Shown in pieces: positions 1 through 27,787 of a DNA stretch of 64,000 nt. The stretch's first letter is position 1. Each line of letters opens with the position of its first letter. Source of the DNA: Schmidtea polychroa (Eukaryota); NCBI GenBank assembly GCA_044892525.1, contig CM097886.1, positions 162,428,312 to 162,492,311 on the forward strand, given 5' to 3'. The translations under genes were made by a program, and so were the position numbers. Below the pieces are notes generated by a model, which did not search any database, had not been told where the DNA came from, and saw only the letters and a program-made list of their open reading frames with translations.

Positions 1-3000
1 TCAGGAAAGAGGTCCACCAAATTAAACTTACTCCCCAACAGAAAGATCCCAAAACATCGGGGGGTGGCCTTCCAAAATTCATGGAGACAATCAAACGGAA
101 TGGAGTTAAGAAAGTGAGTAATGGTAACCTGATATATCTCCAGAAACAAAACTCATGTGTCACATTCCTGATTAGTGAATGGTATAAAAATAAGAGCAAC
201 ATTACTGTTCTTTCCCCTGAACTGACATCGAATGTTATTGCACAAAACGATACATTCATTAGAGAAAATGTCACGTTTAAACAATTTGCTGGAATAGAAC
301 ATGTCATCAGTGTCATTCCAGACGACAAGAGTTGGAGTCTTTATCTTTTCTCTTTTGCTTTAGGAATCAGTTACATTTTCAACTTTAACAACCGAATTCT
401 AACTGAGAGACTAATCGTTATAGGAGAAAACATGACAGACTATATGAATAGATTTTTCCTTTCTCAAACGAAAATTAACTTCAATAGTCACCACAACATC
501 GATCATGGTTCCATAACATCTGGCGACCCACAGATATTTGCTTCTGTTTTCATTGAATTAGTCGAAAAACTACTTTTTGACAATCAGGTTTCTCGCACAA
601 GTATCAGTGAGTCCCTAAATTCTTTTAAACTTCACCAAGCAAATGAGATCTGCCAGAATTTAAATATGATTAATTTTAAAATTAGCGAAGAAATTATTTC
701 AACTTATTTCAGTAATTTAAAATTAGATGTAAAATTTATATTGCTGAATCCGACGATTTGTTCTGCAATCATTGATGATTGCACCGAACACATTAATGGG
801 TTTTTAAATTATGAATGTCTCATTCAAGCACAGGTAATTTTTGCCATCATTGCACCCCCAAAACATCGGGAAATTCTTTTAATTCTCGATTATAACACTG
901 ATGAGTTTTATATTCTTAATCCTATTACGCTGACTGGAAGTGAAAACTGTCTATCTATTTGCAAGAGTCTTAGAAATAAAATTAATGAAATTAAAGAAAC
1001 ACCTGGCCTTGTATTGAATTTTGGTGAATGTCCGCATGACACCCGCGGATCTGGCCTTGTAAGTAAAATTCTTATTTGCGCTTTCATTAAAAACTATGCG
1101 AACGACTTGCCCCTTGTAAATTTAAACCTGCGTGAGATAGGTAACATCATCAGTTCGCTACTTCCGATTATCAAAGAGTCAAAAAGATGTAAAAATTCAA
1201 TCCCTACTAAAATCAATAAAATCAAAGAAAGTAACTTAAACTTGAAACAGCGCAAAATCAAGATTGAGTTACTTCTCAGAAAAGTAATGTTTCTTAATGT
1301 AAATCAAATCATTGATGTTATCAATGAAGAGTTCCCAAATCGTTCAAAAACTACACTGAAACCGTATTTGGGTAATAAGAAAAAAACTCATAAAATCACT
1401 AAAAGCAAATTAATTACAAAATTCATGACTAACATGAAATCAACAGTTAACAAAATATTCAATGACATAGATGTCAGTGAACGACCAACTTTTCAGAATA
1501 TTGTTTTAAATTTCCTTATAAAATCTCCTTTTCAAGGAAATTGGAAAAACATTTTCAACTTCTGCAAACGTTCAGAGAAAGCACTAAATCTGGAACTCTT
1601 CACAAATGTTGAAGTATTTGATGAACTGAAGAAAGCTGACAACACAAGTCCTGGTATGGATGGAATACAATATCGTGACTTATTGCTTCTTGATCCTGAG
1701 GGTAAACTGCTAACGTTTTTATATAATAAAATTATTTCCGACAAAATCTTACCAGACAGTTGGAAGACTTTTAAAACCCTTCTTACTCCTAAGCCTGGCA
1801 AAGAAGGCAAATATGACGACGTCTCATCTTGGCGCCCAATTGCTCTACTGTCTGTCATTTATAAGGTTTTTGCTTCTTGTCTAGCAAGTCGTCTGACGAG
1901 TTGGATAAACTCGAATGAACTGTTACACATTGGTCAGAAAGGTGGCTCAAAACATGATGGATGTGTTGAGCACAACTCGATTCTTTCTGCTGCATTAGAA
2001 CATTCTAAGTATAGCGTAAACAAACCTCTTGCAATTGCCTGGCTCGACATAAAAGATGCTTTCGGCAGTGTTCCACATGATTATATGTGGTCCTTACTAC
2101 GATTCATTGGAGTAAGTGAAGAATTTGCATCCATCATCCAGATGCTATATTCCAACACAAGCACTTTCTATAGTTGTGGTCACATTCTAACTCCAAATAT
2201 TTCGATAAAGCAAGGTGTCAAGCAAGGATGCCCTATTTCCATGATTTTGTTTGCTTTGGCCATCAACCCAGTACTTGAAGCGGTATCTCAATCTGATTCG
2301 AGACCCTTCAGGATAGGAAAATCTCCTGTTAAGATACTTGCTTATGCAGATGACATTGCTCTTGTTGCAAAATCTGTTGAAGAACTACAAAAAATAACCG
2401 ATATCGCTGTTGCAACTGCAGCTGAAATTGGTTTCGAATACCGACCTGAAAAATGTGGATACCTTCAACTGCCAAATATTGACATAGAAAGTGAAATTTC
2501 AATAAATGGCATCAAAATTAGAAAGTTGCAATCTGAAGATTTCTATCAATATCTTGGAGTACCTGTAGGTGAAGAGACTGACCAAAATCCATATGACATC
2601 CTTGAAAAAGTGGTCTCTGACACGAGAAAGCTTGCTGATTCTGACTTACTTGGCTGGCAAAAACTAAAAGCCTATAAGATTTTTGTTCATTCACGATTGA
2701 TCTTTCCCTTTAGAACTAGAGAGATTAAGACTAGTACTCTTTCGAAACCTAATAGCAACAAGAAACTTTCTGATAACATAACCAGTCAACTGAGAAGTTG
2801 CTTTAGAAAAATGCTGATTTTGCCAAAAAACTCCGAAGTAAGCTATTTCTATAACTCCACTGAAAATGGAGGGGCAAACTGTGTGGATCTTCTTGACGAA
2901 TATCACACTCAGACAATAACACACATTTTCCGATTGCTAACATCAAAGTGTGACTTTGCTAAAAAGATCAACACTGATTCATTGAAATTTGTCACTGGTC

Positions 3001-4555
3001 CTCGTCTTGGTATAAAAGAACCCACTCTTCAAGAAAGTCTTGACTGGCTCAATGGTAAAGACATCAAATCACAGCACTCTGGTAAGAAAACGCGATTCCA
3101 GAGAGCCAGAAGTGCAGTTGCATTTTTCGAAAAAACCCATAACATCAACATATCATTCATTGTCACAAACCATGAGACATCGCTCTATATAACAACCGCA
3201 ACGCGTGGCACATGCATCTTGACTTCTGATCTTCGTCAAACAACTTCTAAGGTCTTGCACATGGCACTTTGTGACTCTTACCTTAGAAAATGGGAGAACG
3301 GTTGCACTTCCAACATCATTGCTTCAGCAATCAAACTTTCACCTCTAATAAATAAAGCAATTTTTCACGGTGATCTGTCTGAATTTGCTTGGAACTTCAT
3401 TCATCGTGCTCGCACAAACACTCTTTCAATCAATGCGAAGCCTTACAATAAAGGTGAAGAAAGACTTTGTCGTCGATGTCACATTGAAGATGAGACAATG
3501 TCACACATCCTTCAGAATTGTAAGGTCCATCTAACTCTTAGTTCTGAGAGGCATGACAATTGTCTTAAACTAATTGCAAATCGTCTGAAAATCAAAGCTC
3601 ATCTTATTGTCGTAGTAGATAACATGTGTTCACTTGTTCCAAACTCGAGGGAACGAGTGGACTTAATGATCACTAACTTGTCCAAAAAAACAATCTTTTT
3701 AGTTGATTTGAAATGTCCGAGCGACTCTGTCACTAACTTTGAACAAGTTGACAAACGTAATTTGAGGAAATATGATTCTTTAAAGAATGCAATACAGGCT
3801 GTCAAACCTGACTTTAAAGTCGAACTTGACACTTGCATTATTGGAGCTTTAGGATCTTTTCCTTTGAAAACTTCTGAAATACTCTCTAAAGTAGGTATTA
3901 AGGATAAAGAGCTAAAATGTCTATTAAAGGAATGTGCGATAAGTAATATCACACATTCTGCCAGGCGGTGGTATTACCACAAGAACGGCACTTTAAAAGA
4001 CATTGAAAAAGATCAGCTCTCAGATTTTGTAAATAATTCACTAAAGCCTGCAAGCAATAGCATCGTCAACTATTGATGTATATATGTATTTTTTGTTATA
4101 TATATATTTAGTATTTTAGATGTTCCTCGCCCTTAAGCGGACTTTAAAATATAATTATTTGTATAAATGTATTTGTTAGATAGCTAACAGGCTTTTGTAC
4201 TTTGCAAAAGTTTATTTTAGATGCTGCAGATTGGATATTAGGTTTCTGATGATTGTCGTTAATATCGTTAGTCTAATCTCAAAAGAAAACTGATGATGAT
4301 ATGATCATAAATCAATAATCAAAATGCAATGCCAGAAATCAAGTCTGATGACAACAAAAAATCAGAGCCAAGGACGATTCGGTGAATTTACAATAACAAT
4401 TGAGTCGAAATGATTCCAAAAACAAAACATATCTGTGAAACATCCTCTTTCTGACTCTTATGTTGTTGTATCTCTTCCGAATGGCATGTTCCATGTAGAA
4501 CATTGTCCAAATGTATATGAAAGTCAAATTTATTATAATTAATAAACGTTATTAA
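1..4555 (+). mobile_element. tRNA-Leu-inserted RLE-type (R2/NeSL-like) non-LTR retrotransposon, copy 1 (5' part outside window)
   Basis: Near-identical to 8869-13423. Carries intact RT-CCHC-RLE coding sequence and a ~480-nt 3' UTR that ends ...AATAAACGTTATTAA and joins tRNA-Leu nt 6. Confidence 0.95.
3..4076 (+). CDS. ORF2 polyprotein, copy 1 (5'-partial): pseudo-protease repeats, reverse transcriptase, CCHC knuckle, restriction-like endonuclease
   Basis: Frame is open from base 3. RT motifs PGMDGI, WRPIALL, LDIKDAFGSVPH, GVKQGCPIS, YADD, YLGV; CRRC-x8-H-x4-C knuckle; RVDL...VDLKCP...RKY nuclease motif. Confidence 0.95.
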   Translation, partial: RKEVHQIKLTPQQKDPKTSGGGLPKFMETIKRNGVKKVSNGNLIYLQKQNSCVTFLISEWYKNKSNITVLSPELTSNVIAQNDTFIRENVTFKQFAGIEHVISVIPDDKSWSLYLFSFALGISYIFNFNNRILTERLIVIGENMTDYMNRFFLSQTKINFNSHHNIDHGSITSGDPQIFASVFIELVEKLLFDNQVSRTSISESLNSFKLHQANEICQNLNMINFKISEEIISTYFSNLKLDVKFILLNPTICSAIIDDCTEHINGFLNYECLIQAQVIFAIIAPPKHREILLILDYNTDEFYILNPITLTGSENCLSICKSLRNKINEIKETPGLVLNFGECPHDTRGSGLVSKILICAFIKNYANDLPLVNLNLREIGNIISSLLPIIKESKRCKNSIPTKINKIKESNLNLKQRKIKIELLLRKVMFLNVNQIIDVINEEFPNRSKTTLKPYLGNKKKTHKITKSKLITKFMTNMKSTVNKIFNDIDVSERPTFQNIVLNFLIKSPFQGNWKNIFNFCKRSEKALNLELFTNVEVFDELKKADNTSPGMDGIQYRDLLLLDPEGKLLTFLYNKIISDKILPDSWKTFKTLLTPKPGKEGKYDDVSSWRPIALLSVIYKVFASCLASRLTSWINSNELLHIGQKGGSKHDGCVEHNSILSAALEHSKYSVNKPLAIAWLDIKDAFGSVPHDYMWSLLRFIGVSEEFASIIQMLYSNTSTFYSCGHILTPNISIKQGVKQGCPISMILFALAINPVLEAVSQSDSRPFRIGKSPVKILAYADDIALVAKSVEELQKITDIAVATAAEIGFEYRPEKCGYLQLPNIDIESEISINGIKIRKLQSEDFYQYLGVPVGEETDQNPYDILEKVVSDTRKLADSDLLGWQKLKAYKIFVHSRLIFPFRTREIKTSTLSKPNSNKKLSDNITSQLRSCFRKMLILPKNSEVSYFYNSTENGGANCVDLLDEYHTQTITHIFRLLTSKCDFAKKINTDSLKFVTGPRLGIKEPTLQESLDWLNGKDIKSQHSGKKTRFQRARSAVAFFEKTHNINISFIVTNHETSLYITTATRGTCILTSDLRQTTSKVLHMALCDSYLRKWENGCTSNIIASAIKLSPLINKAIFHGDLSEFAWNFIHRARTNTLSINAKPYNKGEERLCRRCHIEDETMSHILQNCKVHLTLSSERHDNCLKLIANRLKIKAHLIVVVDNMCSLVPNSRERVDLMITNLSKKTIFLVDLKCPSDSVTNFEQVDKRNLRKYDSLKNAIQAVKPDFKVELDTCIIGALGSFPLKTSEILSKVGIKDKELKCLLKECAISNITHSARRWYYHKNGTLKDIEKDQLSDFVNNSLKPASNSIVNY

Positions 4556-4632
4556 GATGGCCGAGTGGTTAAGGCGGTGGACTTAAGATCCACTGGACAA
4601 TGTCCGCGTGGGTTCGAACCCCACTTCTAGCA
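4556..4632 (+). pseudogene. 5'-truncated tRNA-Leu(UAA), nt 6-82, fused to the retroelement 3' end
   Basis: GCTAG is replaced by element-derived ATTAA, which breaks the acceptor stem. A and B boxes are intact. Confidence 0.9.
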
Positions 4633-4770
4633 ATATTTTTACTTTTCACTTTCGACAACAAATAATGTTGCTCTTAAAAATTATTGAAAGTTAAATATCG
4701 TTTCTCCTCATTAATAAAGTGAAGAAGCTTGATTTTGGTTTATTAATTTTTTGAAAGTAAATTTTTCAGA

Positions 4771-4852
4771 GCTAGGATGGCCGAGTGGTTAAGGCGGTGG
4801 ACTTAAGATCCACTGGACAATGTCCGCGTGGGTTCGAACCCCACTTCTAGCA
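4771..4852 (+). tRNA. tRNA-Leu(UAA)
   Basis: 82-nt cloverleaf: acceptor GCTAGGA/TTCTAGC, anticodon stem GTGGA/TCCAC with loop CT-TAA-GA, variable arm GGAC-AAT-GTCC, T arm GTGGG-TTCGAAC-CCCAC, followed by a T5 tract. Confidence 0.97.
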
Positions 4853-4990
4853 ATATTTTTACTTTTCACTTTCGACAACAAATAATGTTGCTCTTAAAAA
4901 TTATTGAAAGTTAAATATCGTTTCTCCTCATTAATAAAGTGAAGAAGCTTGATTTTGGTTTATTAATTTTTTGAAAGTAAATTTTTCAGA

Positions 4991-5072
4991 GCTAGGATGG
5001 CCGAGTGGTTAAGGCGGTGGACTTAAGATCCACTGGACAATGTCCGCGTGGGTTCGAACCCCACTTCTAGCA
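4991..5072 (+). tRNA. tRNA-Leu(UAA)
   Basis: Identical to 4771-4852. Confidence 0.97.
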
Positions 5073-5210
5073 ATATTTTTACTTTTCACTTTCGACAACA
5101 AATAATGTTGCTCTTAAAAATTATTGAAAGTTAAATATCGTTTCTCCTCATTAATAAAGTGAAGAAGCTTGATTTTGGTTTATTAATTTTTTGAAAGTAA
5201 ATTTTTCAGA

Positions 5211-5292
5211 GCTAGGATGGCCGAGTGGTTAAGGCGGTGGACTTAAGATCCACTGGACAATGTCCGCGTGGGTTCGAACCCCACTTCTAGCA
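5211..5292 (+). tRNA. tRNA-Leu(UAA)
   Basis: Identical to 4771-4852. Confidence 0.97.
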
Positions 5293-5430
5293 ATATTTTT
5301 ACTTTTCACTTTCGACAACAAATAATGTTGCTCTTAAAAATTATTGAAAGTTAAATATCGTTTCTCCTCATTAATAAAGTGAAGAAGCTTGATTTTGGTT
5401 TATTAATTTTTTGAAAGTAAATTTTTCAGA

Positions 5431-5512
5431 GCTAGGATGGCCGAGTGGTTAAGGCGGTGGACTTAAGATCCACTGGACAATGTCCGCGTGGGTTCGAACC
5501 CCACTTCTAGCA
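5431..5512 (+). tRNA. tRNA-Leu(UAA); intact gene flanking the 5' end of copy 2
   Basis: Identical to 4771-4852. The element starts 34 bp after its 3' end. Confidence 0.97.
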
Positions 5513-5515
5513 ATA

Positions 5516-5520
5516 TTTTT
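5516..5520 (+). terminator. Pol III T5 terminator (example; present in every array unit)
   Basis: TTTTT begins 4 nt after the discriminator base and is followed by further T4 tracts. Confidence 0.75.
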
Positions 5521-5607
5521 ACTTTTCACTTTCGACAACAAATAATATTTGATTTTCTGCTACTCTTAAATAATAAGTAGCCTGTTTATTTGTATCTGTA
5601 TTTTGCA

Positions 5608-5856
5608 ATGGATTGTAATAATTTGAAAATCAATTCTTTTTATTCTAAAAAAACTGGATTTATTTCTCGTTCTGACTTAGTGATGGAAGGATTCAATAAA
5701 CTCAACGGTAAGGATATCAATGAAACTGGATTTGGTTCCTGCTCTCACTCAATGGAGGATGATTTCAATAAACTAAACCGTAAGGTTAATTTATCTATTA
5801 AATATATAAATAATTGTTTTATGGAACAAGTTGACGGTGCAATTGCTTGCACATAA
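5608..5856 (+). CDS. ORF0a, 82-aa leader ORF starting at the element's first AUG
   Basis: ATG...TAA is conserved in copies 2-4 and contains an internal ~24-aa repeat (TGF..ME.FNKLN.K.N). Function unknown. Confidence 0.45.
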   Translation: MDCNNLKINSFYSKKTGFISRSDLVMEGFNKLNGKDINETGFGSCSHSMEDDFNKLNRKVNLSIKYINNCFMEQVDGAIACT

Positions 5857-6434
5857 CTTTTTAATAATTATATAAATAATGTTTATGATAATGTTTTTGA
5901 AGTCGAGGTCTCCAGAAAGTATGTTGACCGAAACTCTTCACCTTCTTATTCTTCAAGCATTAGAAAGGATTTTATAAATAGAAGCAATAGTTTTTGCGAA
6001 ACTGATAAGAAAGTTGCTTCTGTGGAGTTTTCAACTAACAAAATTGACTTTTCTAGAGTCGTTACAATCGACAACAAATGAATATTAAATAAAAATCTTT
6101 TAATAAATAAAAATGAAAATTTCGATAAAAATAATGTATTTATAAAAAATACATCTTTAAAAAATGATTCCTTCCCCAGTGCATTGTCTTCCGAGCTTGA
6201 AAGTCCTAATTTAAAAATTACAATTAAAAATAATTTAATTAAAAAATTTAATTTACCTAGTTTTGAAAATGATAATTTACAGACCCATAAATTAGCTAAC
6301 TTAAACAAAGGTAATTTTGATAATTATAATTTTAAAAATCAGAATTATAAAATTTCATCAAAAGATATTTCAAAAGAAAATATTAAAAATAAAAAATTCC
6401 AAACTTCCCAGAAAACCAGTAAAGCTGTTAATAA

Positions 6435-8288
6435 TTTAAATTTTGTGAAAAAAATCAGAAAACAAAATTAACTTTTAAAGCGGATAATATAAAGTTTGAC
6501 AAGTCAACCCGAACATTGAATTCAAAAGAAAAACAAGAATTCTTTAGATGTTTCCCTCAATTTATAAAATTAATAAAATCAAAAGAAACTATTAATAAGC
6601 ATCATAACATTAATAGTGAACTCTTGAAAATTACCCAGGCTGCAAACCCTCTAAAAATAATTGGATTTTCAAAATTCTTTTATAGGAATCACAACATCTG
6701 TATTTCTTTGAATTCTTTGAAAAATAACACTGTCCATAAAGTAAATCGTTTACTGAATGGACACACTAAAACACTCCTAATTGAATCCAAGGTTGTAAAA
6801 TTTTACAACACAAAGAATAAGTTTGTTTCCGCATCCCCAACCATCAGATGGTTCTTATATGCTCTTTCTCAGAAATTAGCAGGGACCGCGTCCATTTCAA
6901 ATACTAAGTACAGGGGCGTACAAATAAATAACATATTAAATGAAATCAAGCAACGAGGTGAACTTTCTGATTATCTAATAAAATCAAAAATAAAATTTTC
7001 TAATGGGGACTTTGTTTTGCTCGATATACTAAATAACTGTGAAGCTGATGATACCGATATTACCTTAAAATCCTCAGCTCTTTCAAGATCAGAATTAAAA
7101 GATCTTTACCAGAAATTCCCCGACATTCAGGAGCTTTGTTTTACAGAAAACATAGAGAAAAATCCTGAATTACTAAATAATTTAATTCATGACCTAAAAT
7201 CAAATGAAAACTTTCCCAAAGAGATCTCATTTGTGGGGGGTAAACTAATCAAAACGTGTAAAATACCAATTTCTGATGTCTCAAATGCTGAGAGTGAATC
7301 GGATATTATGTTCAATCTTGGCTTATTGAACCTCTACAACACAGCTGAGAGTGACAAAACATTAAGGTCTCTTTTCTGTCAGCCAAAATCGTCTGAAAAA
7401 TTGGTTGACATTATATTTTACCTAAACTATTTACAGTTAAAAGGTGACTTAAAATACATAACAAATGGAACATATGGCGACTATGTCCACAACTACGTTC
7501 GTAATTCCTTGTTGATGTGCTCTGTTATTAACATAGATGATTATGAAACTCTCTTACGGGAAAATATTGAAAGTTGGGCGCCCAACATGGTTGATATGAT
7601 ACCATCATCATCATACTATAGCTCTAGCTGCCTTGAAAGACTTTTAAAACTTCGACAGTGGAAACTGTCAGGAGAGATTGATAGAATTCACAACATAATC
7701 TCTCCTGAAACCATCAATAAAGTCAATTCATTTCTTGACAAAATCGACGAACTCTGTCCACAAAAGGCTATCCAATTAAAGGCTCTTGAGAAATTAAGCA
7801 GTGGAATTAATAAAATGGAATGGGACACAAAGGAAGAAGAGATGATTAAGGCTAGAAGATTTCTCTTCTTCATCCTTAGAGACAAAAAGAAATTTTTATT
7901 TACCAGTAAATCTTCCTACCGTATACCTCAGCACTGTAGGAAGATATGCACAGCCAATATGACTTGCATTATCACAGGTATGCTTGATGTTCTGCTGACA
8001 TGGTTGATTGAAAATAACGATGAACAGAAGACGGACACATCTGAAACAAACATCTCGGAAACTGTCAATGACTCCGCAGAAGCAGATGCGAAGGAGACAT
8101 CTCGGTCCATAGAGATATACGACACTTTGGAGTCTAAACTAAAGGAACATACAACTCTGAAACGACAGCTGCCGGTTGATTTGGATATAATTCCATCTAC
8201 ACCCACAATTTCCAGTTGTGATCAACAGGAGGACCTACTAACAAAATCAAGTAGGAAAACGAGGAAAGTAGTCTCCAAAATAAAATGA
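6435..8288 (+). CDS. ORF1, orphan protein (617 open codons; first Met only at 7308)
   Basis: Long open frame in AT-rich DNA, also intact in copy 3. No domain recognised and the start is uncertain. Confidence 0.8.
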   Translation, partial: FKFCEKNQKTKLTFKADNIKFDKSTRTLNSKEKQEFFRCFPQFIKLIKSKETINKHHNINSELLKITQAANPLKIIGFSKFFYRNHNICISLNSLKNNTVHKVNRLLNGHTKTLLIESKVVKFYNTKNKFVSASPTIRWFLYALSQKLAGTASISNTKYRGVQINNILNEIKQRGELSDYLIKSKIKFSNGDFVLLDILNNCEADDTDITLKSSALSRSELKDLYQKFPDIQELCFTENIEKNPELLNNLIHDLKSNENFPKEISFVGGKLIKTCKIPISDVSNAESESDIMFNLGLLNLYNTAESDKTLRSLFCQPKSSEKLVDIIFYLNYLQLKGDLKYITNGTYGDYVHNYVRNSLLMCSVINIDDYETLLRENIESWAPNMVDMIPSSSYYSSSCLERLLKLRQWKLSGEIDRIHNIISPETINKVNSFLDKIDELCPQKAIQLKALEKLSSGINKMEWDTKEEEMIKARRFLFFILRDKKKFLFTSKSSYRIPQHCRKICTANMTCIITGMLDVLLTWLIENNDEQKTDTSETNISETVNDSAEADAKETSRSIEIYDTLESKLKEHTTLKRQLPVDLDIIPSTPTISSCDQQEDLLTKSSRKTRKVVSKIK

Positions 8289-19900: not shown

Positions 19901-21592
19901 CTACAAAAAATAACCGATATCGCTGTTGCAACTGCAGCTGAAATTGGTTTCGAATACCGACCTGAAAAATGTGGATACCTTCAACTGCCAAATATTGACA
20001 TAGAAAGTGAAATTTCAATAAATGGCATCAAAATTAGAAAGTTGCAATCTGAAGATTTCTATCAATATCTTGGAGTACCTGTAGGTGAAGAGACTGACCA
20101 AAATCCATATGACATCCTTGAAAAAGTGGTCTCTGACACGAGAAAGCTTGCTGATTCTGACTTACTTGGCTGGCAAAAACTAAAAGCCTATAAGATTTTT
20201 GTTCATTCACGATTGATCTTTCCCTTTAGAACTAGAGAGATTAAGACTAGTACTCTTTCGAAACCTAATAGCAACAAGAAACTTTCTGATAACATAACCA
20301 GTCAACTGAGAAGTTGCTTTAGAAAAATGCTGATTTTGCCAAAAAACTCCGAAGTAAGCTATTTCTATAACTCCACTGAAAATGGAGGGGCAAACTGTGT
20401 GGATCTTCTTGACGAATATCACACTCAGACAATAACACACATTTTCCGATTGCTAACATCAAAGTGTGACTTTGCTAAAAAGATCAACACTGATTCATTG
20501 AAATTTGTCACTGGTCCTCGTCTTGGTATAAAAGAACCCACTCTTCAAGAAAGTCTTGACTGGCTCAATGGTAAAGACATCAAATCACAGCACTCTGGTA
20601 AGAAAACGCGATTCCAGAGAGCCAGAAGTGCAATTGCATTTTTCGAAAAAACCCATAACATCAACATATCATTCATTGTCACAAACCATGAGACATCGCT
20701 CTATATAACAACCGCAACGCGTGGCACATGCATCTTGACTTCTGATCTTCGTCAAACAACTTCTAAGGTCTTGCACATGGCACTTTGTGACTCTTACCTT
20801 AGAAAATGGGAGAACGGTTGCACTTCCAACATCATTGCTTCAGCAATCAAACTTTCACCTCTAATAAATAAAGCAATTTTTCACGGTGATCTGTCTGAAT
20901 TTGCTTGGAACTTCATTCATCGTGCTCGCACAAACACTCTTTCAATCAATGCGAAGCCTTACAATAAAGGTGAAGAAAGACTTTGTCGTCGATGTCACAT
21001 TGAAGATGAGACAATGTCACACATCCTTCAGAATTGTAAGGTCCATCTAACTCTTAGTTCTGAGAGGCATGACAATTGTCTTAAACTAATTGCAAATCGT
21101 CTGAAAATCAAAGCTCATCTTATTGTCGTAGTAGATAACATGTGTTCACTTGTTCCAAACTCGAGGGAACGAGTGGACTTAATGATCACTGACTTGTCCA
21201 AAAAAACAATCTTTTTAGTTGATTTGAAATGTTCGAGCGACTCTGTCACTAACTTTGAACAAGTTGACAAACGTAATTTGAGGAAATATGATTCTTTAAA
21301 GAATGCAATACAGGCTGTCAAACCTGACTTTAAAGTCGAACTTGACACTTGCATTATTGGAGCTTTAGGGTCTTTTCCTTTGAAAACTTCTGAAATACTC
21401 TCTAAAGTAGGTATTAAGGATAAAGAGCTAAAATGTCTATTAAAGGAATGTGCGATAAGTAATATCACACATTCTGACAGGCGGTGGTATTACCACAAGA
21501 ACGGCACTTTAAAAGACATTGAAAAAGATCAGCTCTCAGATTTTGTAAATAATTCACTAAAGCCTGCAAGCAATAGCATCGTCAACTATTGA
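16937..21592 (+). pseudogene. ORF2, copy 3, broken by a premature TAA just upstream of the RT domain
   Basis: ORF track fragments 16943-19096 and 19172-21592 are in one frame; TCAGAGTAAGCA versus TCAGAGAAAGCA in copies 1 and 2. Confidence 0.9.
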
Positions 21593-22071
21593 TGTATATA
21601 TGTATTTTTTGTTATATATATATTTAGTATTTTAGATGTTCCTCGCCCTTAAGCGGACTTTAAAATATAATTATTTGTATAAATGTATTTGTTAGATAGC
21701 TAACAGGCTTTTGTACTTTGCAAAAGTTTATTTTAGATGCTGCAGATTGGATATTAGGTTTCTGATGATTGTCGTTAATATCGTTAGTCTAATCTCAAAA
21801 GAAAACTGATGATGATATGATCATAAATCAATAATCAAAATGCAATGCCAGAAATCAAGTCTGATGACCACAAAAAATCAGAGCCAAGGACGATTCGGTG
21901 AATTTAAAACAACAATTGAGTCGAAATGATTCCAAAAACAAAACATATCTGTGAAACATCCTCTTTCTGACTCTTATGTTGTTGTATCTCTTCCGAATGG
22001 CATGTTCCATGTAGAACATTGTCCAAATGTATAGAAAAGTCAAATTTATTATAATTAATAAACGTTATTAA

Positions 22072-22182
22072 GATGGCCGAGTGGTTAAGGCAGTGGACTT
22101 AAGATCCACTGGACAATGTCCGCGTGGGTTCGAACCCCACTTCTAGCAATATTTTTACTTTTCACTTTCGACAACAAATAAT
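22072..22182 (+). repeat. Single 111-bp target duplicate (tRNA-Leu nt 6 to +34) separating copies 3 and 4
   Basis: Only this segment lies between the two elements. It has one G>A change (GCAGTGG). Confidence 0.92.
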
Positions 22183-25100
22183 ATTTGATTTTCTGCTACT
22201 CTTAAATAATAAGTAGCCTGTTTATTTGTATCTGTATTTTGCAATGGATTGTAATAATTTGAAAATCAATTCTTTTTATTCTAAAAAAACTGGATTTATT
22301 TCTCGTTCCGACTCAGTGATGGAAGGATTCAATAAACTCAACGGTAAGGATATCAATGAAACTGGATTTGGTTCCTGCTCTCACTCAATGGAGGATGATT
22401 TCAATAAACTAAACCGTAAGGTTAATTTAATTATTAAATATATAAATAATTGTTTTATGGAACAAGTTGACGGTGCAATTGCTTGCACATAACTTTTTAA
22501 TAATTATATAAATAATGTTTATGATAATGTTTTTGAAGTCGAGGTCTCCAGAAAGTATGTTGACCGAAACTCTTCACCTTCTTATTCTTCAAGCATTAGA
22601 AAGGATTTTATAAATAGAAGCAATAGTTTTTGCGAAACTGATAAGAAAGTTGCTTCTGTGGAGTTTTCAACTAACAAAATTGACTTTTCTAGAGTCGTTA
22701 CAATCGACAACAAATGCATATTAAATAAAAATCTTTTAATAAATATAAATGAAAATTTCGATAAAAATAATGTATTTATAAAAAATCCATCTTTAAAAAA
22801 TGATTCCTTCCCCAGTGCATTGTCTTCCGAGCTTGAAAGTCCTAATTTAAAAATTACAATTAAAAATAATTTAATTAAAAAATTTAATTTACCTAGTTTT
22901 GAAAATGATAATTTACAGACCCATAAATTAGTTAACTTAAACAAAGGTAATTTTGATAATTATAATTTTAAAAATCAGAATTATAAAATTTCATCAAAAG
23001 ATATTTCAAAAGAAAATTTTTAAAAATAAAAAATTCCAAACTTCCCAGAAAACCAGTAAAGCTGTTAATAATTTAAATTTTGTGAAAAAAAATCAGAAAA
23101 CAAAATTAACTTTTAAAGCGGATAATATAAAGTTTGACAAGTCAACCCGAACATTGAATTCAAAAGAAAAACAAGAATTCTTTAGATGTTTCCCTCAATT
23201 TATAAAATTAATAAAATCAAAAGAAACTATTAATAAGCATCATAACATTAATAGTGAACTCTTGAAAATAACCCAGGCTGCAAACCCTCTAAAAATAATT
23301 GGATTTTCAAAATTCTTTTATAGGAATCACAACATCTGTATTTCTTTGAATTTTTTGAAAAATAACACTGTCCATAAAGTAAATCGTTTACTGAATGGAC
23401 ACACTAAAACACTCCTAATTGAATCCAAGGTTGTAAAATTTTACAACACAAAGAATAAGTTTGTTTCCGCATCCCCAACCATCAGACGGTTCTTATATGC
23501 TCTTTCTCAGAAATTAGCAGGGACCGCGTCCATTTCAAATACTAAGTACAGGGGCGTACAAATAAATAACATATTAAATGAAATCAAGCAACGAGGTGAA
23601 CTTTCTGATTATCTAATAAAATCAAAAATAAAATTTTCTAATGGGGATTTTGTTATGCTCGATATACTAAATAACTGTGAAGCTGATGATAACGATATTA
23701 CCTTAAAATCCTCAGCTCTTTCAAGATCAGAATTAAAAGATCTTTACCAGAAATTCCCCGACATTCAGGAGCTTTGTTTTACAGAAAACATAGAGAAAAA
23801 TCCTGAATTACTAAATAATTTAATTCATGACCTAAAATCAAATGAAAACTTTCCCAAAGAGATCTCATTTGTGGGGGGTAAACTAATCAAAACGTGTAAA
23901 ATACCAATTTCTGATGTCTCAAATGCTGAGAGTGAATCGGATATTATGTTCAATCTTGGCTTATTGAACCTCTACAACACAGCTGAGAATGACAAAACAT
24001 TAAGGTCTCTTTTCTGTCAGCCAAAATCGTCTGAAAAATTGGTTGACGTTATATTTTACCTAAACTATTTACAGTTAAAAGGTGACTTAAAATACATAAC
24101 AAATGGAACATATGGCGACTATGTCCACAACTACGTTCGTAATTCCTTGTTGATGTGCTCTGTTATTAACATGAGGACCTACTAACAAAATCAAGTAGGA
24201 AAACGAGGAAAGTAGTCTCCAAAATAAAATGAAGGTGCGTGCCTGCATCAGTCCCAACATCTGCCCCAATCTCGAAGGAGACTGATGCAGACAGCACAAT
24301 AAATATTATTAAACATGATAAAAATTTGATAATAAAACGCGACCCAAAGATCTGGTTTACTGATGATGATATTGATAGTTTTCTCGAAAATCACATCATC
24401 AACCCAAAATTTGCGTCTATTAAATGTTTTATTGTTGAGATTTTGTGCTCTAACCTTGAGAATGACATTTTCCCAATTCCGGAAAGAGTCTTGAAAGCAC
24501 AAATAATATTATGCCCCCTTAACATCAACAAATCTCACTGGATCTTGTTCGTATATTGTAAGTCTTCTCTCATTTCTTACTTCATCGATCCAATCCTTCT
24601 CAATCGGCATAGTTTTACAAATAAAACAATAGCCCTTAAAATCACAATGGCTCTGAATGAATTATTTGACCTTAAAGCAGCCATGACTTTTCATCCACAT
24701 GATAACTTTTCGTACCAAAATAATAGTTACGATTGTGGGCCATACATCTGCGCATATGCCATGATGATTTGTGGAGAATGGCAGAGCTTGTCGGGCAGCT
24801 TCATTGAGACCATCAGGAAAGAGGTCCACCAATTTAAACTTACTCCACAACAGAAAGATCCCAAAACATCGGGGGGTGGCCTTCCAAAATTCATGGAGAC
24901 AATCAAACGGAATGGAGTTAAGAAAGTGAGTAATGGTAACCTGATATATCTCCAGAAACAAAACTCATGTGTCACATTCCTGATTAGTGAATGGTATAAA
25001 AATAAGAGCAACATTACTGTTCTTTCTCCTGAACTGACATCGAATGTTATTGCACAAAACGATACATTCATTAGAGAAAATGTCACGTTTAAACAATTTG

Positions 25101-27543
25101 CTGGAATAGAACATGTCATCAGTGTCATTCCAGACGACAAGAGTTGGAGTCTTTATCTTTTCTCTTTTGCTTTAGGAATCAGTTACATTTTCAACTTTAA
25201 CAACCGAATTCTAACTGAGAGACTAATCGGTATAGGAGAAAACATGTCAGACTATATGAATAGATTTTTCCTTTCTCAAACGAAAATTAACTTCAATAGT
25301 CACCACAACATCGATCACGGTTCCATAACATCTGGCGACCCACAGATATTTGATTCTGTTTTCATTGAATTAGTCGAAAAACTACTTTTTGACAATCAGG
25401 TTTCTCGCACAAGTATCAGTGAGTCCCTAAATTCTTTTAAACTTCACCAAGCAAATGAGATCTGCCAGAATTTAAATATGATTAATTTTAAAATTAGCGA
25501 AGAAATTATTTCAACTTATTTCAGTAATTTAAAATTAGATGTAAAATTTATATTGCTGAATCCGACGATTTGTTCTGCAATCATTGATGATTGCACCGAA
25601 CACATTAATGAGTTTTTAAATTATGAATGTCTCATTCAAGCACAGGTAATTTTTGCCATCATTGCACCCCCAAAACATCGGGAAATTCTTTTAATTCTCG
25701 ATTATAACACTGATGAGTTTTATATTCTTAATCCTATTACGCTGACTGGAGGTGAAAACTGTCTTAGAAACAAAATTAATGAAATTAAAGAAACACCTGG
25801 CCTTGTTTTTGAATTTTGGTGAATGTCCGCATGACACCCGCGGATTTGGCCTTGTAAGTAAAATTCTTATTTGCGCTTTCATTAAAAACTATGCGAACGA
25901 CTTGCCCCTTGTAAATTTAAACCTGCGTGAGATAGGTAACATCATCAGTTCGCTACTTCCGATTATCAAAGAGTCAAAAAGATGTAAAAATTCAATCCCT
26001 ACTAAAATCAATAAAATCAAAGAAAGTAACTTAAACTTGAAACAGCGCAAAATCAAGATTGAGTTACTTCTCAGAAAAGTAATGTTTCTTAATGTAAATC
26101 AAATCATTGATGTCATCAATGAAGAGTTCCCAAATCGTTCAAAAACTACACTCAAACCGTATTTGGGTAATAAGAAAAAAACTCATAAAATCACTAAAAG
26201 CAAATTAATTACAAAATTCATGACTAACATGAAATCAACAGTTAACAAAATATTCAATGACATAGATGTCAGTGAACGACCAACTTTTCAGAATATTGTT
26301 TTAAATTTCCTTATAAAATCTCCTTTTCAAAGAAATTGGAATAGCATCTTCAACTTCTTCAAACGTTCAGAGTAAGCACTAAATCTGGAACTCTTCACAA
26401 ATGTTGAAGTTTTTGATGAACTGAAGAAAGCTGACAACACAAGTCCTGGTATGGATGGAATACAATATCGTGACTTGTTGCTTCTTGATCCTGAGGGTAA
26501 CTTGCTAACGTTTTTATATAATAAAATTATTTCCGACAAAATCATACCAGACAGTTGGAAGACTTTTAAAACTCTTCTAACTCCTAAGCCTGGCAAAGAA
26601 GGCAAATATGACGACGTCTCATCTTGGCGCCCAATTGCTCTACTGTCTGTCATTTATAAGGTTTTTGCTTCTTGTCTAGCAAGTCGTCTGACGAGTTGGA
26701 TAAACTCGAACGAATTGTTACACATTGGTCAGAAAGGTGGCTCAAAACATGATGGATGTGTTGAGCCCAACTCGATTCTTTCTGCTGCATTAGAACATTC
26801 TAAGTATAGCCTAAACAAACCTCTTGCAATTGCGTGGTTCGACATAAAAGATCCTTTCGGCAGTGTTCCACATGATTATATGAGGTCCTTACTGCGATTC
26901 ATTGGAGTGAGTGAAGAATTTGCATCCATCATCCAGATGCTATATTCCAACACAAGCACTTTCTATAGTTGTGGTCACATTCTAACTCCAAATATTTCGA
27001 TAAAGCAAGGTGTCAAGCAAGGATGCCCTATTTCCATGATTTTGTTTGCTTTGGCCATCAACCCAGTACTTGAAGCGGTATCTCAATCTGATTCGAGACC
27101 CTTCAGGATAGGAAAATCTCCTGTTAAGATACTTGCTTATGCAGATGACATTGCTCTTGTTGCAAAATCTGTTGAAGAACTACAAAAAATAACCGATATC
27201 GCTGTTGCAACTGCAGCTGAAATTGGTTTCGAATACCGACCTGAAAAATGTGGATACCTTCAACTGCCAAATATTGACATAGAAAGTGAAATTTCAATAA
27301 ATGGCATCAAAATTAGAAAGTTGCAATCTGAAGATTTCTATCAATATCTTGGAGTACCTGTAGGTGAAGAGACTGACCAAAATCCATATGACATCCTTGA
27401 AAAAGTGGTCTCTGACACGAGAAAGCTTGCTGATTCTGACTTACTTGGCTGGCAAAAACTAAAAGCCTATAAGATTTTTGTTCATTCACGATTGATCTTT
27501 CCCTTTAGAACTAGAGAGATTAAGACTAGTACTCTTTCGAAAC
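22183..27543 (+). mobile_element. Retrotransposon copy 4, decayed (frameshifts, 694-bp deletion in ORF1, 3'-truncated)
   Basis: Same 5' junction; deletion junction at 24172/24173; frameshifts near 25.76-25.81 kb; TAA at 26373-26375. Ends ...CTTTCGAAAC, fused to the tRNA anticodon loop. Confidence 0.93.
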
Positions 27544-27593
27544 TTAAGATCCACTGGACAATGTCCGCGTGGGTTCGAACCCCACTTCTAGCA
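27542..27593 (+). pseudogene. 3' part of tRNA-Leu(UAA), from the anticodon loop onward
   Basis: ACTTAAGATCCACTGGAC...CACTTCTAGCA, followed by a diverged array spacer. Confidence 0.88.
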
Positions 27594-27733
27594 ATATTTT
27601 TACTTTTCACTTTCGACAGCAAATAATTTTGCTCTTAAAAATATTTTTGAAGGTTAAATATCGTTTCTCCTCATTAATAACGTGAAGAAGCTTGATTTTG
27701 GTTTATTAATTTTTTGAAAGTAAATTTTTCAGA

Positions 27734-27787
27734 GCTAAGATGGCCGAGTGGTTAAGGCGGTGGACTTAATATATTCTGGACAATGTC
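27734..27787 (+). pseudogene. Degenerate, 3'-truncated tRNA-Leu at the array edge
   Basis: GCTAAGATGGCCGAGTGGTTAAGGCGGTGGACTTAATATATTCTGGACAATGTC; anticodon stem mutated and T arm missing. Confidence 0.85.

What the first reader, a model, noticed from the sequence alone, without database searches (positions are those of the whole stretch)
1..27787. Sequence-specific NeSL-like retrotransposon living in a tRNA-Leu(UAA) tandem array
Seen: four head-to-tail copies of one element, each ending at tRNA-Leu nt 5/6; the three visible 5' ends all start 34 bp after an intact tRNA. 4, 3 and 0 intact tRNAs lie between successive copies. ORF2 has the order protease-RT-CCHC-RLE. Established: RLE-type non-LTR elements are target-specific for multicopy RNA genes (R2 in 28S, NeSL-1 in SL1 exons, Utopia in U2), and a Ulp1-like protease upstream of RT is a NeSL-clade hallmark. 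Inference: this is a tRNA-Leu-specific NeSL-group family that was recently active, since copy 2 has ORF1 and ORF2 intact. As I recall, some tRNA-targeting RLE families are already catalogued (e.g. from Ciona and planarians), so novelty of the Leu target must be checked, not assumed.
Basis: partly seen in the sequence, partly recalled or inferred. Interest (0 to 1): 0.9.

Follow-up and report, generated by a model that had tools for sequence, protein, structure and literature searches.

The report
Retrotransposon family that targets tRNA-Leu genes
A young, R2-like (restriction-endonuclease type) retrotransposon with an Ulp1-type protease sits four times, always at the same spot, in a tandem array of tRNA-Leu(UAA) genes; it is a new member of a flatworm-type lineage already known to aim at tRNA genes, and it appears to make its polymerase by reading through a stop codon.

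Summary
A 220-bp tRNA-Leu(UAA) tandem array (window 1-27787) holds four head-to-tail copies of one 7877-bp non-LTR element. Copies 1-3 end exactly at tRNA nt 5/6. Copy 4 does not: it is cut off inside ORF2 and fused to the tRNA near the anticodon. All three visible 5' ends lie 34 nt after a tRNA end.

ORF2 runs Ulp1 protease, two degenerate Ulp1-like domains, RT, CCHC, RLE. Relatives from metagenomes (39-58% identity) end against 5'-truncated tRNA-Val, tRNA-Phe and another tRNA. The last 43 nt match the published 3' end of planarian LIN25_SM (tRNA-Glu-specific, NeSL clade) at 35 positions. So tRNA targeting is a lineage trait, already published for tRNA-Arg, Glu and Pro; Leu is a new member.

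Whether the four copies here are separate insertions or partly array recombination is unresolved. "ORF1 intact" is doubtful, since no AUG lies near its start.

New observations:
- ORF1 and ORF2 share a frame across a single UGA followed by a covarying hairpin in 10/10 elements, which suggests programmed readthrough.
- The junction geometry fits a 111-bp target duplication that would regenerate the tRNA as well as it fits a 109-bp deletion.

The parts
1..4555 (+). Copy 1 (c1), 5' end cut by the window edge: ORF2 part 1-4076, 3' UTR 4077-4555
   Evidence: Colinear with c2 nt 3323-7877; 13 mismatches, no indel. The ORF2 part is open.
4556..5546 (+). tRNA block 1. Holds a 5'-truncated tRNA-Leu (nt 6-82, 4556-4632), four intact tRNA-Leu(UAA) genes (4771-4852, 4991-5072, 5211-5292, 5431-5512), and the first 34 nt of a spacer (5513-5546, with the T5 Pol III terminator).
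5547..13423 (+). Copy 2 (c2), full length 7877 bp, both ORFs open
5547..6434 (+). c2 5' region: only short ORF pieces in three frames; no similarity to the N-termini of relatives' ORF1; no HDV-like ribozyme
6435..8288 (+). c2 ORF1 (open frame; listed ORF 6516-8288), ending in UGA 8286-8288; lineage-specific protein of unknown fold
8291..8353 (+). Hairpin after the ORF1 UGA. The main 11-bp stem pairs 8299-8309 with 8336-8346. It is the candidate readthrough stimulator.
8289..12944 (+). c2 ORF2, in frame with ORF1 (listed ORF 8295-12944, 1549 aa)
8397..8909 (+). Ulp1/SENP-like cysteine protease domain 1 (ORF2 residues 35-205) with invariant H100, D117, Q160, C166
8928..8936 (+). Conserved Gly-Gly-Gly (residues 212-214) in the disordered linker: candidate di-glycine self-cleavage site
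   Evidence: inference.
9009..10040 (+). Two further Ulp1-like domains (residues 239-402 and 410-582) that lack the catalytic residues
10665..11429 (+). Reverse transcriptase (residues 791-1045; YADD 973-976)
12336..12593 (+). CCHC knuckle (C1348, C1351, H1360, C1365) and restriction-like endonuclease (D1412, D1427, K1429)
12945..13423 (+). c2 3' UTR. It holds a hairpin motif shared with L001 and an AATAAA 9 nt before the terminus, and has no poly(A). The last 43 nt match the published LIN25_SM end at 35 positions.
13424..14194 (+). tRNA block 2: truncated tRNA-Leu (13424-13500), three intact tRNA-Leu genes (13639, 13859, 14079), then 34 nt of spacer
14195..22071 (+). Copy 3 (c3), full length. 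ORF1 15164-16936 is open. ORF2 16943-21592 is broken by one premature stop.
22072..22182 (+). 111 bp between c3 and c4: tRNA-Leu nt 6-82 (one substitution) plus 34 nt of spacer
22183..27547 (+). Copy 4 (c4), the oldest and most degraded copy. ORF1 is broken by one large deletion. ORF2 is broken by one premature stop, one 1-bp insertion and one 18-bp deletion. ORF2 also lacks its last 1328 bp, and the 3' UTR is missing.
27548..27787 (+). Right edge of the array: tRNA-Leu 3' part (27548-27592), diverged spacer, degenerate tRNA 5' part (27735-27787)

Best explanation
[quoted passage not shown] It belongs to, or sits next to, the flatworm LIN/R5 branch of the NeSL clade, and its target is the 5' part of tRNA genes, here tRNA-Leu(UAA) between nt 5 and 6.

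Shown:
- the anatomy (5' region, ORF1, UGA, ORF2 = Ulp1 protease + two degenerate Ulp1-like domains + RT + CCHC + RLE, 3' UTR without poly(A));
- the exact repeated junctions;
- relatives that end against other 5'-truncated tRNAs.

Inferred mechanism:
1. A Pol II transcript is translated into ORF1 protein.
2. Programmed readthrough of the UGA produces an ORF1-ORF2 polyprotein. The leaky context (UGA-CGG or CUA in most members) and a hairpin 7-11 nt downstream would stimulate it.
3. The Ulp1-like protease cuts the polyprotein, probably at the conserved Gly-Gly just after the protease domain.
4. The RLE nicks the antisense strand of the tRNA gene at nt 5/6, and RT primes there on the 3' end of the element RNA (target-primed reverse transcription, as in R2).
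5. The sense strand is cut either 111 bp downstream or upstream. A downstream cut at spacer nt 34/35 gives a 111-bp target duplication that leaves an intact tRNA plus terminator in front of each insertion. An upstream cut gives a 109-bp deletion. In a perfect 220-bp array the two read the same.

c4 is an old copy that later lost its 3' end. c1-c3 are young.
For: Element and junctions:
- Repeats, ORFs and junctions.
- RT, Ulp1, CCHC and RLE: Pfam; invariant catalytic residues in 13 sequences; PDB profile hits to R2 proteins (1e-88) and Ulp1/SENP1 (2e-10); C-terminus aligned to R2 residues 939-1094; AF2 model plus Foldseek to NEDP1/SENP/Ulp1.

tRNA targeting as a lineage trait:
- L003 ends at tRNA-Val(AAC) nt 14/15 inside a tRNA-Val cluster; L033 ends at tRNA-Phe(GAA) nt ~17/18; L001 ends at a tRNA D-arm.
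- Published LIN25_SM (Glu), LIN15_SM (Arg) and NeSL-1_TV (Pro): PMC4640811.
- 35 of 43 terminal nt are shared with LIN25_SM, and the position in the tRNA is the same (GATGG).

Readthrough:
- 10/10 elements have ORF1 and ORF2 in one frame across one UGA.
- The next codon is CGG in 6 and CUA in 1.
- The first Met after the UGA lies at codon 50-177 in 8 of 9.
- A hairpin appears in all nine MFE folds.
- 84% of cells are paired against 17-34% in the slid controls; 6 pairs show double changes; 0/500 shuffles reach the score.
- This matches the UGA-CGG/CUA plus stem-after-8-nt signal of PMC3159437.

Youth: c1/c2/c3 differ by 0.3-0.6% with no indels.

Long-TSD precedent: R9, 126 bp (cited in PMC9977147). 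The LIN15_SM flanks show the same overlapping geometry.
Against: - Only one locus of this genome was seen. All copies share identical 5' and 3' junctions, as array recombination would also give.
- No 5' junction of any relative could be examined.
- ORF1 has no AUG near its start in c2, c3 or c4, and the 5' ~0.9 kb holds only ORF fragments. Even the best copy may therefore not be autonomous.
- NeSL/LIN placement rests on the protease, the target type and 3'-end similarity, not on an RT tree with named references.
- No zinc-finger or Myb DNA-binding domain was found, so how the tRNA gene is recognised is unknown.
- Readthrough, proteolysis and the cleavage sites are inferred from sequence only.
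- In the window itself the codon after UGA is AGG, not CGG.
Confidence: 0.78

Rival explanations
1. The family is tRNA-specific, but the four copies here are not four retrotranspositions. One or two insertions were multiplied, together with flanking tRNA units, by unequal crossing-over or gene conversion inside the tandem array.
For: - The 5' junction is identical in c2, c3 and c4, and the 3' junction is identical in c1-c3.
- Copy spacings differ by exact multiples of 220 bp (8868 against 8648).
- The tRNA units are 100% identical, which shows strong homogenisation.
- In R2-type elements the 5' junctions of independent insertions usually vary (stated for R2 and Utopia in PMC4640811).
Against: - Site-specific cleavage of both strands, as in R9, would also give identical junctions.
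- c3 and c4 are separated by exactly the 111 bp expected if c3 entered the tRNA regenerated in front of the older c4.
- c4 is clearly older than c1-c3 (1% divergence plus indels), so at least two events are needed.
Confidence: 0.4
2. The element has no target specificity. One chance insertion into a tRNA array was amplified segmentally.
For: Only one locus was seen in this genome. In the published figure only one of four LIN25_SM copies is next to tRNA-Glu.
Against: Three relatives from other organisms, at 43-58% protein identity, end precisely against 5'-truncated tRNAs of other types. The published LIN15_SM and LIN25_SM junctions point the same way.
Confidence: 0.04
3. The UGA between ORF1 and ORF2 is not read through. 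ORF2 is made by reinitiation or internal initiation, or the element depends on a suppressor-like event with no programmed signal, and the hairpin only reflects protein-coding conservation.
For: - Both arms of the stem are coding (P-A-S... and ...D-A-D), so part of the conservation is at protein level.
- The window's context is UGA-AGG and L002's is UGA-UGU, neither a classic leaky context.
- Three of nine single folds have weak z-scores.
Against: - No AUG lies near the ORF2 start, and conserved residues begin right after the UGA.
- Compensatory changes keep the pairing while the sequence changes; L034 has a completely different stem.
- The spacing of 7-11 nt is that of known readthrough stimulators.
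Confidence: 0.15
4. The family belongs to the R2 clade proper (like R8 and R9, which changed target) rather than to the NeSL/LIN/R5 clade.
For: The best solved-structure matches are R2 proteins. Many named database hits are annotated R2-like.
Against: - Only R2 and L1 structures exist, so that comparison cannot discriminate.
- R2 elements have an N-terminal zinc finger and Myb and no protease. This family has the Ulp1 protease and no ZF or Myb.
- In a neighbour-joining tree its nearest outgroups are mostly protease-bearing.
- The 3' end matches LIN25_SM.
Confidence: 0.08

Closest known systems
LIN25_SM and LIN15_SM of the planarian Schmidtea mediterranea (R5/LIN lineage, NeSL clade; Kojima & Jurka 2015, PMC4640811)
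   Same: - RLE-type elements inserted at a fixed place in tRNA genes.
- LIN25_SM's printed 3' end shares 35 of 43 nt with this element and abuts its tRNA at the same position (…TTAA|(T)GATGG…).
- The LIN15_SM flanks show the same geometry: the 5' flank reaches further into the tRNA than the 3' flank starts.
   Different: - The target is tRNA-Leu(UAA), not Glu or Arg.
- The paper does not report a protease, two ORFs, a readthrough signal or a long TSD for LIN families.
- Whether this exact family is already in Repbase as an unstudied LIN entry could not be checked.
NeSL-1 (Caenorhabditis elegans) and Utopia-1_TSP
   Same: [quoted passage not shown]
   Different: - Their targets are the spliced-leader exon and U2 snRNA.
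- They are described with one protein and zinc fingers.
- This family has ORF1-UGA-ORF2, three tandem Ulp1-like domains and no detectable zinc finger upstream of RT.
NeSL-1_TV (Trichomonas vaginalis)
   Same: A NeSL-related element specific for a tRNA gene (tRNA-Pro).
   Different: The host is a protist and its phylogenetic position is unresolved in the source paper.
R9 of bdelloid rotifers (Gladyshev & Arkhipova 2009)
   Same: A site-specific RLE element whose two strand cuts lie far apart, giving a 126-bp target duplication. Here 111 bp are present on both sides of every copy.
   Different: - R9 is an R2-clade element in 28S rDNA.
- In this tandem array a 111-bp duplication cannot be told from a 109-bp deletion.
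R2 (R2Bm, R2Tg; solved structures 8gh6, 9dou, 9nl2)
   Same: RT, CCHC and RLE architecture. The 3' end is defined by the nick, there is no poly(A), and the insertion site in a multicopy RNA gene is strict.
   Different: - R2 has a single ORF, N-terminal ZF/Myb and no protease, and targets 28S.
- R2 has a 5' HDV-like ribozyme; none was found here.
Alphavirus-type readthrough signals (UGA-CGG/CUA plus a 3' stem after ~8 nt; Firth et al. 2011, PMC3159437) and retroviral gag-pol readthrough
   Same: A single in-frame UGA before the polymerase, a leaky 3' context and a covarying stem of 9-13 bp starting 7-11 nt downstream.
   Different: The setting is a non-LTR retrotransposon, and I found no paper describing this there. 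The loop here is short (16-44 nt).
Dada-tL DNA transposons (zebrafish)
   Same: They also insert specifically into tRNA-Leu genes.
   Different: DDE-type DNA transposons with 6-7-bp TSDs; unrelated mechanism.

Membership tests
RLE-type (R2-group) non-LTR retrotransposon | Reverse transcriptase of the non-LTR type with a YADD active site | tested here: met
   Pfam RVT_1 5e-26. All 13 family members match. R2 proteins are the best PDB hits at 1e-88. YADD is invariant.
RLE-type (R2-group) non-LTR retrotransposon | C-terminal CCHC motif followed by a PD-(D/E)XK restriction-like endonuclease | tested here: met
   Invariant C1348, C1351, H1360, C1365, D1412, D1427, K1429. Aligns to R2 protein residues 939-1094.
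RLE-type (R2-group) non-LTR retrotransposon | No LTRs, a precise 3' junction, and insertion at a fixed site of a repeated target | tested here: met
   for this locus. Relatives.
NeSL clade | Ulp1-like cysteine protease upstream of RT (nematode NeSL, Utopia-1_TSP) | tested here: met
   Peptidase_C48 in 13/13 members. H-D-Q-C invariant. Ulp1/SENP1 2e-10. Foldseek hits to NEDP1/SENP/Ulp1.
NeSL clade | RT domain groups with NeSL-1, R5, Utopia and LIN in a phylogeny | not testable with these tools
   No named reference sequences could be fetched. A neighbour-joining tree of database hits only shows that the nearest outgroups are mostly protease-bearing.
LIN/R5 lineage of flatworms with tRNA targets | Sequence relationship to LIN25_SM or LIN15_SM | tested here: inconclusive
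   Only the 43 terminal nt printed in the paper's S6 Fig could be compared: 35/43 identical, against 25-26 for more distant relatives. The sequence is AT-rich, so this is suggestive rather than proof.
LIN/R5 lineage of flatworms with tRNA targets | Host is a flatworm | tested here: inconclusive
   The host is an AT-rich animal (Forkhead gene with a 71-nt intron). The best Fox hit is an unnamed metagenomic protein.
LIN/R5 lineage of flatworms with tRNA targets | 3' end abuts a fixed position of a tRNA gene | tested here: met
   nt 5/6 of tRNA-Leu in three copies. This is the same position as LIN25_SM in tRNA-Glu.
Programmed stop-codon readthrough with a 3' stem (alphavirus-like type) | A single in-frame UGA, with the downstream ORF lacking its own start | tested here: met
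   10/10 elements. First Met at codon 50-177 in 8 of 9.
Programmed stop-codon readthrough with a 3' stem (alphavirus-like type) | Leaky context UGA-CGG or UGA-CUA | tested here: inconclusive
   7 of 10 elements have it. The window has AGG; L002 and L037 have UGU.
Programmed stop-codon readthrough with a 3' stem (alphavirus-like type) | Conserved stem about 8 nt after the stop, supported by compensatory changes | tested here: met
   84% paired, 6 pairs with double changes, 0/500 shuffles.
Programmed stop-codon readthrough with a 3' stem (alphavirus-like type) | A readthrough product is actually made | not testable with these tools
   Needs expression data from the host.
Long target-site duplication (R9-like) | The same long target segment is present on both sides of an insertion | tested here: inconclusive
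   tRNA nt 6-82 plus 34 nt (111 bp) flank every copy on both sides. In a 220-bp tandem array a 109-bp deletion gives the same picture.

The most novel reading that the evidence does not exclude
This lineage would be the first non-LTR retrotransposon group shown to express its polymerase by programmed UGA readthrough, driven by a conserved covarying hairpin, as an ORF1-protease-RT-endonuclease polyprotein that cleaves itself at a di-glycine. It would insert into tRNA genes with a ~111-bp target duplication that rebuilds an intact tRNA gene and its terminator in front of the element, so the host loses no tRNA gene. The lineage has repeatedly switched between tRNA species (Leu, Val, Phe, Glu, Arg).
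Probability: 0.35. Interest if true: 0.65.

Novelty: new member of a known kind. Interest (0 to 1): 0.5.

Why it matters
Site-specific RLE retrotransposons are the model for target-primed reverse transcription and are being studied as tools that insert genes at harmless places. tRNA-specific relatives of NeSL have been known since 2015, so a tRNA-Leu-specific family adds a member, not a new principle. What adds value:

- **A comparative series.** Closely related elements aimed at different tRNAs (Leu, Val, Phe, one unidentified, plus published Glu and Arg) could show which protein parts read the target. This family has no zinc finger or Myb domain.
- **A clear readthrough signal.** The sequence-supported stop-codon readthrough signal sits in a class of elements where, as far as I could find, only reinitiation, frameshifting or single ORFs are described.
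- **Three tandem Ulp1-like domains.** Only the first is catalytic.
- **A gene-sparing insertion geometry.** The junctions may preserve the tRNA gene.

None of this bears on health or safety. It is of interest to transposon and recoding specialists.

Tried and rejected
- **JGI metagenome scan with the ORF2 alignment.** It gave only distant RTs (26-40% over the RT core), mostly from insect-gut samples, so it was useless for junctions.
- **Contigs of relatives.** Those of P0006 and P0241 could not be read because the sample file was too large. L002, L004, L034, L035, L036 and L037 end before the element's 3' terminus or show no recognisable 5' junction. No relative's 5' junction could therefore be examined.
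- **Ribozymes and 5' structure.** Rfam with permissive thresholds found no HDV-like or other ribozyme across c2. The 5' end has no unusual fold (z = -0.6).
- **Host identification.** The Forkhead exon found only an unnamed 89% hit.
- **Protein search restricted to ORF2 residues 30-600.** It returned just the two closest relatives.
- **ORF1.** No Pfam family, no PDB sequence match and no Foldseek match, despite a fair model of pLDDT 73. Its function stays unknown.
- **Structure prediction with locus-derived ORF1 sequences.** I used proteins returned by the representative search instead.
- **Literature.** The NeSL-1 paper (PMC1460889) is not held.
- **43-nt repeat with CUGAUGAG at 42709-42794.** It is not a recognisable hammerhead.
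- **Elsewhere in the window.** No pieces of the element or of the tRNA unit occur in 27788-64000.

The alignment tools also print consensus lines by themselves. I used none of them and built no consensus.

Full report
**1. What is in the sequence**

The left 27.8 kb of the window is a tandem array of 220-bp units.
- Each unit holds an 82-nt tRNA-Leu(UAA) gene with a long variable arm (Rfam 62 bits) and a 138-nt spacer that begins with a T5 run.
- TRF finds the units 100% identical.
- Four head-to-tail copies of one element are set into the array: c1 1-4555 (its 5' part lies left of the window), c2 5547-13423, c3 14195-22071 (both 7877 bp), and c4 22183-27547.

The junctions are as follows.
- c1, c2 and c3 end with ...AATAAACGTTATTAA. 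The next base is tRNA nt 6 (GATGGCCGAG...), so the first five tRNA bases are missing. Rfam still scores these truncated genes at 47 bits.
- If the target carried an A at nt 5, as the degenerate copy at the array edge does, the shared stretch would reach nt 3.
- c2, c3 and c4 all begin with ATTTGATTTTCTGC..., exactly 34 nt after the last base of a tRNA.

- c4 has no normal 3' end. It stops inside ORF2 and is fused to the tRNA just before the anticodon, followed by a diverged spacer and a degenerate tRNA 5' part that closes the array at about 27787.
- The tRNA in front of c4 is the truncated one left by c3.

**2. The copies compared (counts only)**

| Pair | Mismatches | Length compared | Indels |
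|---|---|---|---|
| c1/c2 | 13 | 4555 bp | none |
| c2/c3 | 22 | 7877 bp | none |
| c1/c3 | 28 | 4555 bp | none |

c4 differs by about 1% and by length changes.

Gene state:
- c2: ORF1 and ORF2 open.
- c1: the visible ORF2 part is open.
- c3: ORF1 open, ORF2 broken by one premature stop.
- c4: ORF1 is broken by one large deletion. ORF2 is broken by one premature stop, one single-base insertion and one 18-bp deletion. ORF2 also lacks its last 1328 bp, and the 3' UTR is gone. There are two single-base length differences in the 5' region.

Synonymous and non-synonymous codon differences are about equal (11 against 14), too few to interpret. The copies carry private differences, so they are not an assembly duplication.

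**3. The proteins**

ORF2 (1549 aa) matches Pfam RVT_1 (5e-26) and Peptidase_C48. Twelve relatives of 39-58% identity over the RT-RLE part were found, all from Logan or ENA environmental assemblies and all with the same length and domains.

In the alignment of 13 sequences these residues are invariant:
- the Ulp1 catalytic set H100, D117, Q160, C166;
- YADD of the RT;
- C1348, C1351, H1360, C1365;
- D1412, D1427, K1429 of the endonuclease.

A profile search of solved structures gives R2 proteins first (9nl2 1e-88, R2Tg 9dou, R2Bm 8gh6), then LINE-1 ORF2p. Ulp1 and SENP1 match profile positions 23-195 at 2e-10. The C-terminal 269 residues align to the CCHC-RLE part of an R2 protein.

An AlphaFold model of residues 1-720 (pLDDT 71) shows three similar alpha/beta units at 35-205, 239-402 and 410-582. 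Foldseek's best hits for the model are NEDP1, SENP5 and Ulp1. Profile-profile comparison supports all three being related: E = 1e-4, 1e-5 and 1e-6, against 0.5 for a control segment. Only the first unit keeps the catalytic residues.

A Gly-Gly-Gly at residues 212-214, in the disordered linker right after the catalytic domain, is present in 77-92% of sequences per column. Ulp1-type proteases cut after a di-glycine, so this is a plausible self-cleavage site. That is inference.

No zinc finger or Myb domain was found upstream of RT.

ORF1 (listed ORF 590 aa; the open frame runs ~617 codons) is lineage-specific.
- Only 14 homologues were found among 1.84 billion representatives.
- It has no Pfam family, no PDB match and no fold match.
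- Full-length homologues (822-960 aa) start with an ATG after 140-311 nt of leader and carry 150-260 N-terminal residues that the window's ORF1 lacks.
- In the window the open frame has no AUG for its first ~290 codons.
- The ~0.9 kb in front of it holds only short ORF pieces in three frames, with no similarity to those N-termini, in c2, c3 and c4 alike.

"ORF1 intact" is therefore not established.

**4. Is the tRNA the target, or an accident?**

The best evidence comes from relatives.
- L003 (43% identity) ends ...AAATAAATTTTT(C) against tRNA-Val(AAC) from nt 15 on. Intact tRNA-Val AAC, CAC and UAC genes follow with different spacers.
- L033 (43%) ends ...AAATAAATGTT against tRNA-Phe(GAA) from the D-loop on, followed by a T7 terminator.
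- L001 (58%) ends ...AATAAATTTTTAA against GTGGTAGAGC, a tRNA D-arm, where its contig stops.

The literature agrees. Kojima and Jurka 2015 (PMC4640811) report NeSL-1_TV as tRNA-Pro-specific. They report the planarian families LIN15_SM and LIN25_SM as tRNA-Arg- and tRNA-Glu-specific, within an R5/LIN group (96% bootstrap) of the NeSL clade whose "target specificity has been diversified".

Their S6 Fig prints the LIN25_SM 3' end. 35 of its 43 nt are identical to the end of the window's element and 34 to L001, against 25-26 for L003 and L033. It abuts tRNA-Glu at ...|TGATGG, the same place as ...|GATGG here.

tRNA targeting is thus a trait of the lineage, with repeated switches of tRNA species and of cut position (nt 5/6 here and in LIN25_SM; nt 14-18 in L001, L003 and L033; about nt 25 in LIN15_SM). 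The pure-accident reading is very unlikely.

What stays open is how many of the four copies here are separate insertions. Identical 5' junctions, spacings that differ by whole units and a homogenised array are what unequal crossing-over would also give. c4 is clearly older than c1-c3, so at least two events are needed.

**5. Junction geometry**

Read in array order, each insertion looks like the loss of 109 bp (spacer nt 35-138 and tRNA nt 1-5). The same sequence can be read differently: tRNA nt 6-82 plus spacer nt 1-34 (111 bp) are present on both sides of every copy. That is a 111-bp target duplication, with the antisense strand nicked at nt 5/6 and the sense strand cut 111 bp downstream. 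Since 109 + 111 = 220, the two readings cannot be separated inside a perfect array.

The duplication reading has three points in its favour.
- It has a precedent in R9 of rotifers, with a 126-bp duplication (Gladyshev and Arkhipova 2009, as cited in PMC9977147).
- It explains identical 5' junctions without recombination.
- It explains the exact 111 bp between c3 and c4, if c3 entered the tRNA rebuilt in front of the older c4.

It would also leave a complete tRNA with its terminator in front of each insertion. The LIN15_SM flanks in S6 Fig have the same overlapping geometry. I rate the two readings as about equally likely.

**6. A stop codon between the ORFs that is probably read through**

- ORF1 and ORF2 lie in the same frame, separated by one UGA. 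This holds in the window and in all nine relatives for which I have DNA: L001-L004, L033-L037.
- The next codon is CGG in six, CUA in one, AGG in the window, and UGU in two that are close to each other.
- Conserved residues begin right after the UGA. The first Met lies 50-177 codons downstream in 8 of 9, so ORF2 has no start of its own.
- In all nine folded sequences the minimum-energy structure has a 9-13-bp stem beginning 7-11 nt after the UGA.
- The stem sequence changes while pairing is kept: CAUCAG/CUGAUG, CACCAG/CUGGUG, CUUCAG/CUGAAG, and an unrelated CCCAGCCCC/GGGGCUGGG in L034.
- On the alignment 84% of cells pair, against 17-34% when the partner is slid. Six pairs show changes on both sides, and 0 of 500 shuffles reach the covariation score. 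Two of the nine rows are misaligned there, which works against the structure.

This is the signal described by Firth et al. 2011 for alphaviruses, several plant viruses, coltiviruses and some fly genes: UGA-CGG or UGA-CUA, then a stem of 10 or more bp after a spacer of 7-9 nt (PMC3159437). I found no paper describing readthrough in a non-LTR retrotransposon. That search covers open-access text only.

The likely product is an ORF1-protease-RT-endonuclease polyprotein made in small amounts next to abundant ORF1 protein, the same logic as gag-pol.

**7. Other features**

- All four complete 3' ends, and LIN25_SM, carry AATAAA 3-9 nt before the terminus and no poly(A).
- The window and L001 share a 3' UTR hairpin motif (ATGTTC...GAACAT); L003 and L033 share another.
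- No HDV-like ribozyme is present at the 5' end.
- The truncated tRNA behind each copy keeps its A and B boxes (sequence).

**8. Host and placement**

The host is an AT-rich animal (about 30% G+C). It has a Forkhead gene in two exons split by a 71-nt intron. The species could not be named. A free-living flatworm is the best guess, from the LIN25_SM similarity.

In a neighbour-joining tree of 121 database sequences, without bootstrap, the window family forms one group with P0001-P0014. Its next neighbours are mostly protease-bearing, apart from 89 mostly arthropod R2-like sequences. A proper RT tree with named references could not be made.

**9. Verdict**

The finding is real. The kind is known: tRNA-specific, NeSL-related RLE elements, notably from planaria. 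This is a new member with a new tRNA target.

The readthrough signal, the triple Ulp1-like array and the possible gene-sparing duplication are worth a specialist's attention. Interest 0.5.

On the reporting rules: I list no places of breaks. ORF bounds printed by the ORF listing and by my scripts are gene bounds.

Noticed in passing
window 8286-8353; L001 1980-2045; L002 1959-2026; L003 2221-2285; L004 3111-3170; L033 2699-2762; L034 2284-2342; L035 1822-1905; L036 1040-1078; L037 2657-2725: A single in-frame UGA lies between ORF1 and ORF2, followed after 7-11 nt by a covarying hairpin, in all ten elements. It is a candidate programmed-readthrough signal, which I did not find described for non-LTR retrotransposons.
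   Followed up: yes
window 8397-10040 (ORF2 residues 35-582): Three tandem Ulp1-like (CE-clan) domains. Only the first keeps H-D-Q-C. A conserved Gly-Gly-Gly follows it in a disordered linker.
   Followed up: yes
window 4556-5546, 13424-14194, 22072-22182: tRNA nt 6-82 plus 34 nt of spacer (111 bp) flank every copy on both sides. A long target duplication that rebuilds the tRNA cannot be told from a 109-bp deletion in this array.
   Followed up: partly
L003 7043-8315: A relative's element sits in a cluster of tRNA-Val genes with three different anticodons (AAC, CAC, UAC) at irregular spacing. The inserted gene has its own distinct downstream flank.
   Followed up: partly
L003, L004, L033, L034, L036 (all from ENA sample ERZ27257134): One environmental sample holds at least five distinct families of this lineage (33-38% full-length ORF2 identity to the window). 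At least two different tRNA targets are seen among them, which suggests diversification within one host or community.
   Followed up: no
window 13400-13423; L001 6975-6995; L003 7020-7042; L033 7455-7475: AATAAA lies 3-9 nt before the element's 3' terminus in every complete end, and there is no poly(A) tail in the DNA copy.
   Followed up: no
window 46008-47110 (+): A FoxC-like Forkhead gene in two exons (46008-46607, 46679-47110) with a 71-nt intron. The best database hit is an unnamed metagenomic protein at 89% identity.
   Followed up: partly
window 30038-31905 (-): Two adjacent ORFs lie on the minus strand, one with a weak DUF4371 match (3.5e-6, below Pfam's cut-off). This is probably the remnant of a hAT-like DNA transposon next to the array edge.
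   Followed up: no
window 42709-42794: Two copies of a 43-nt unit containing CUGAUGAG, the hammerhead core motif. No Rfam family matches, even at E = 1.
   Followed up: partly
window 32411-32602, 37047-37195, 44096-44268, 61883-62077: Four runs of N (149-195 bases), all outside the finding. They were left untouched.
   Followed up: no
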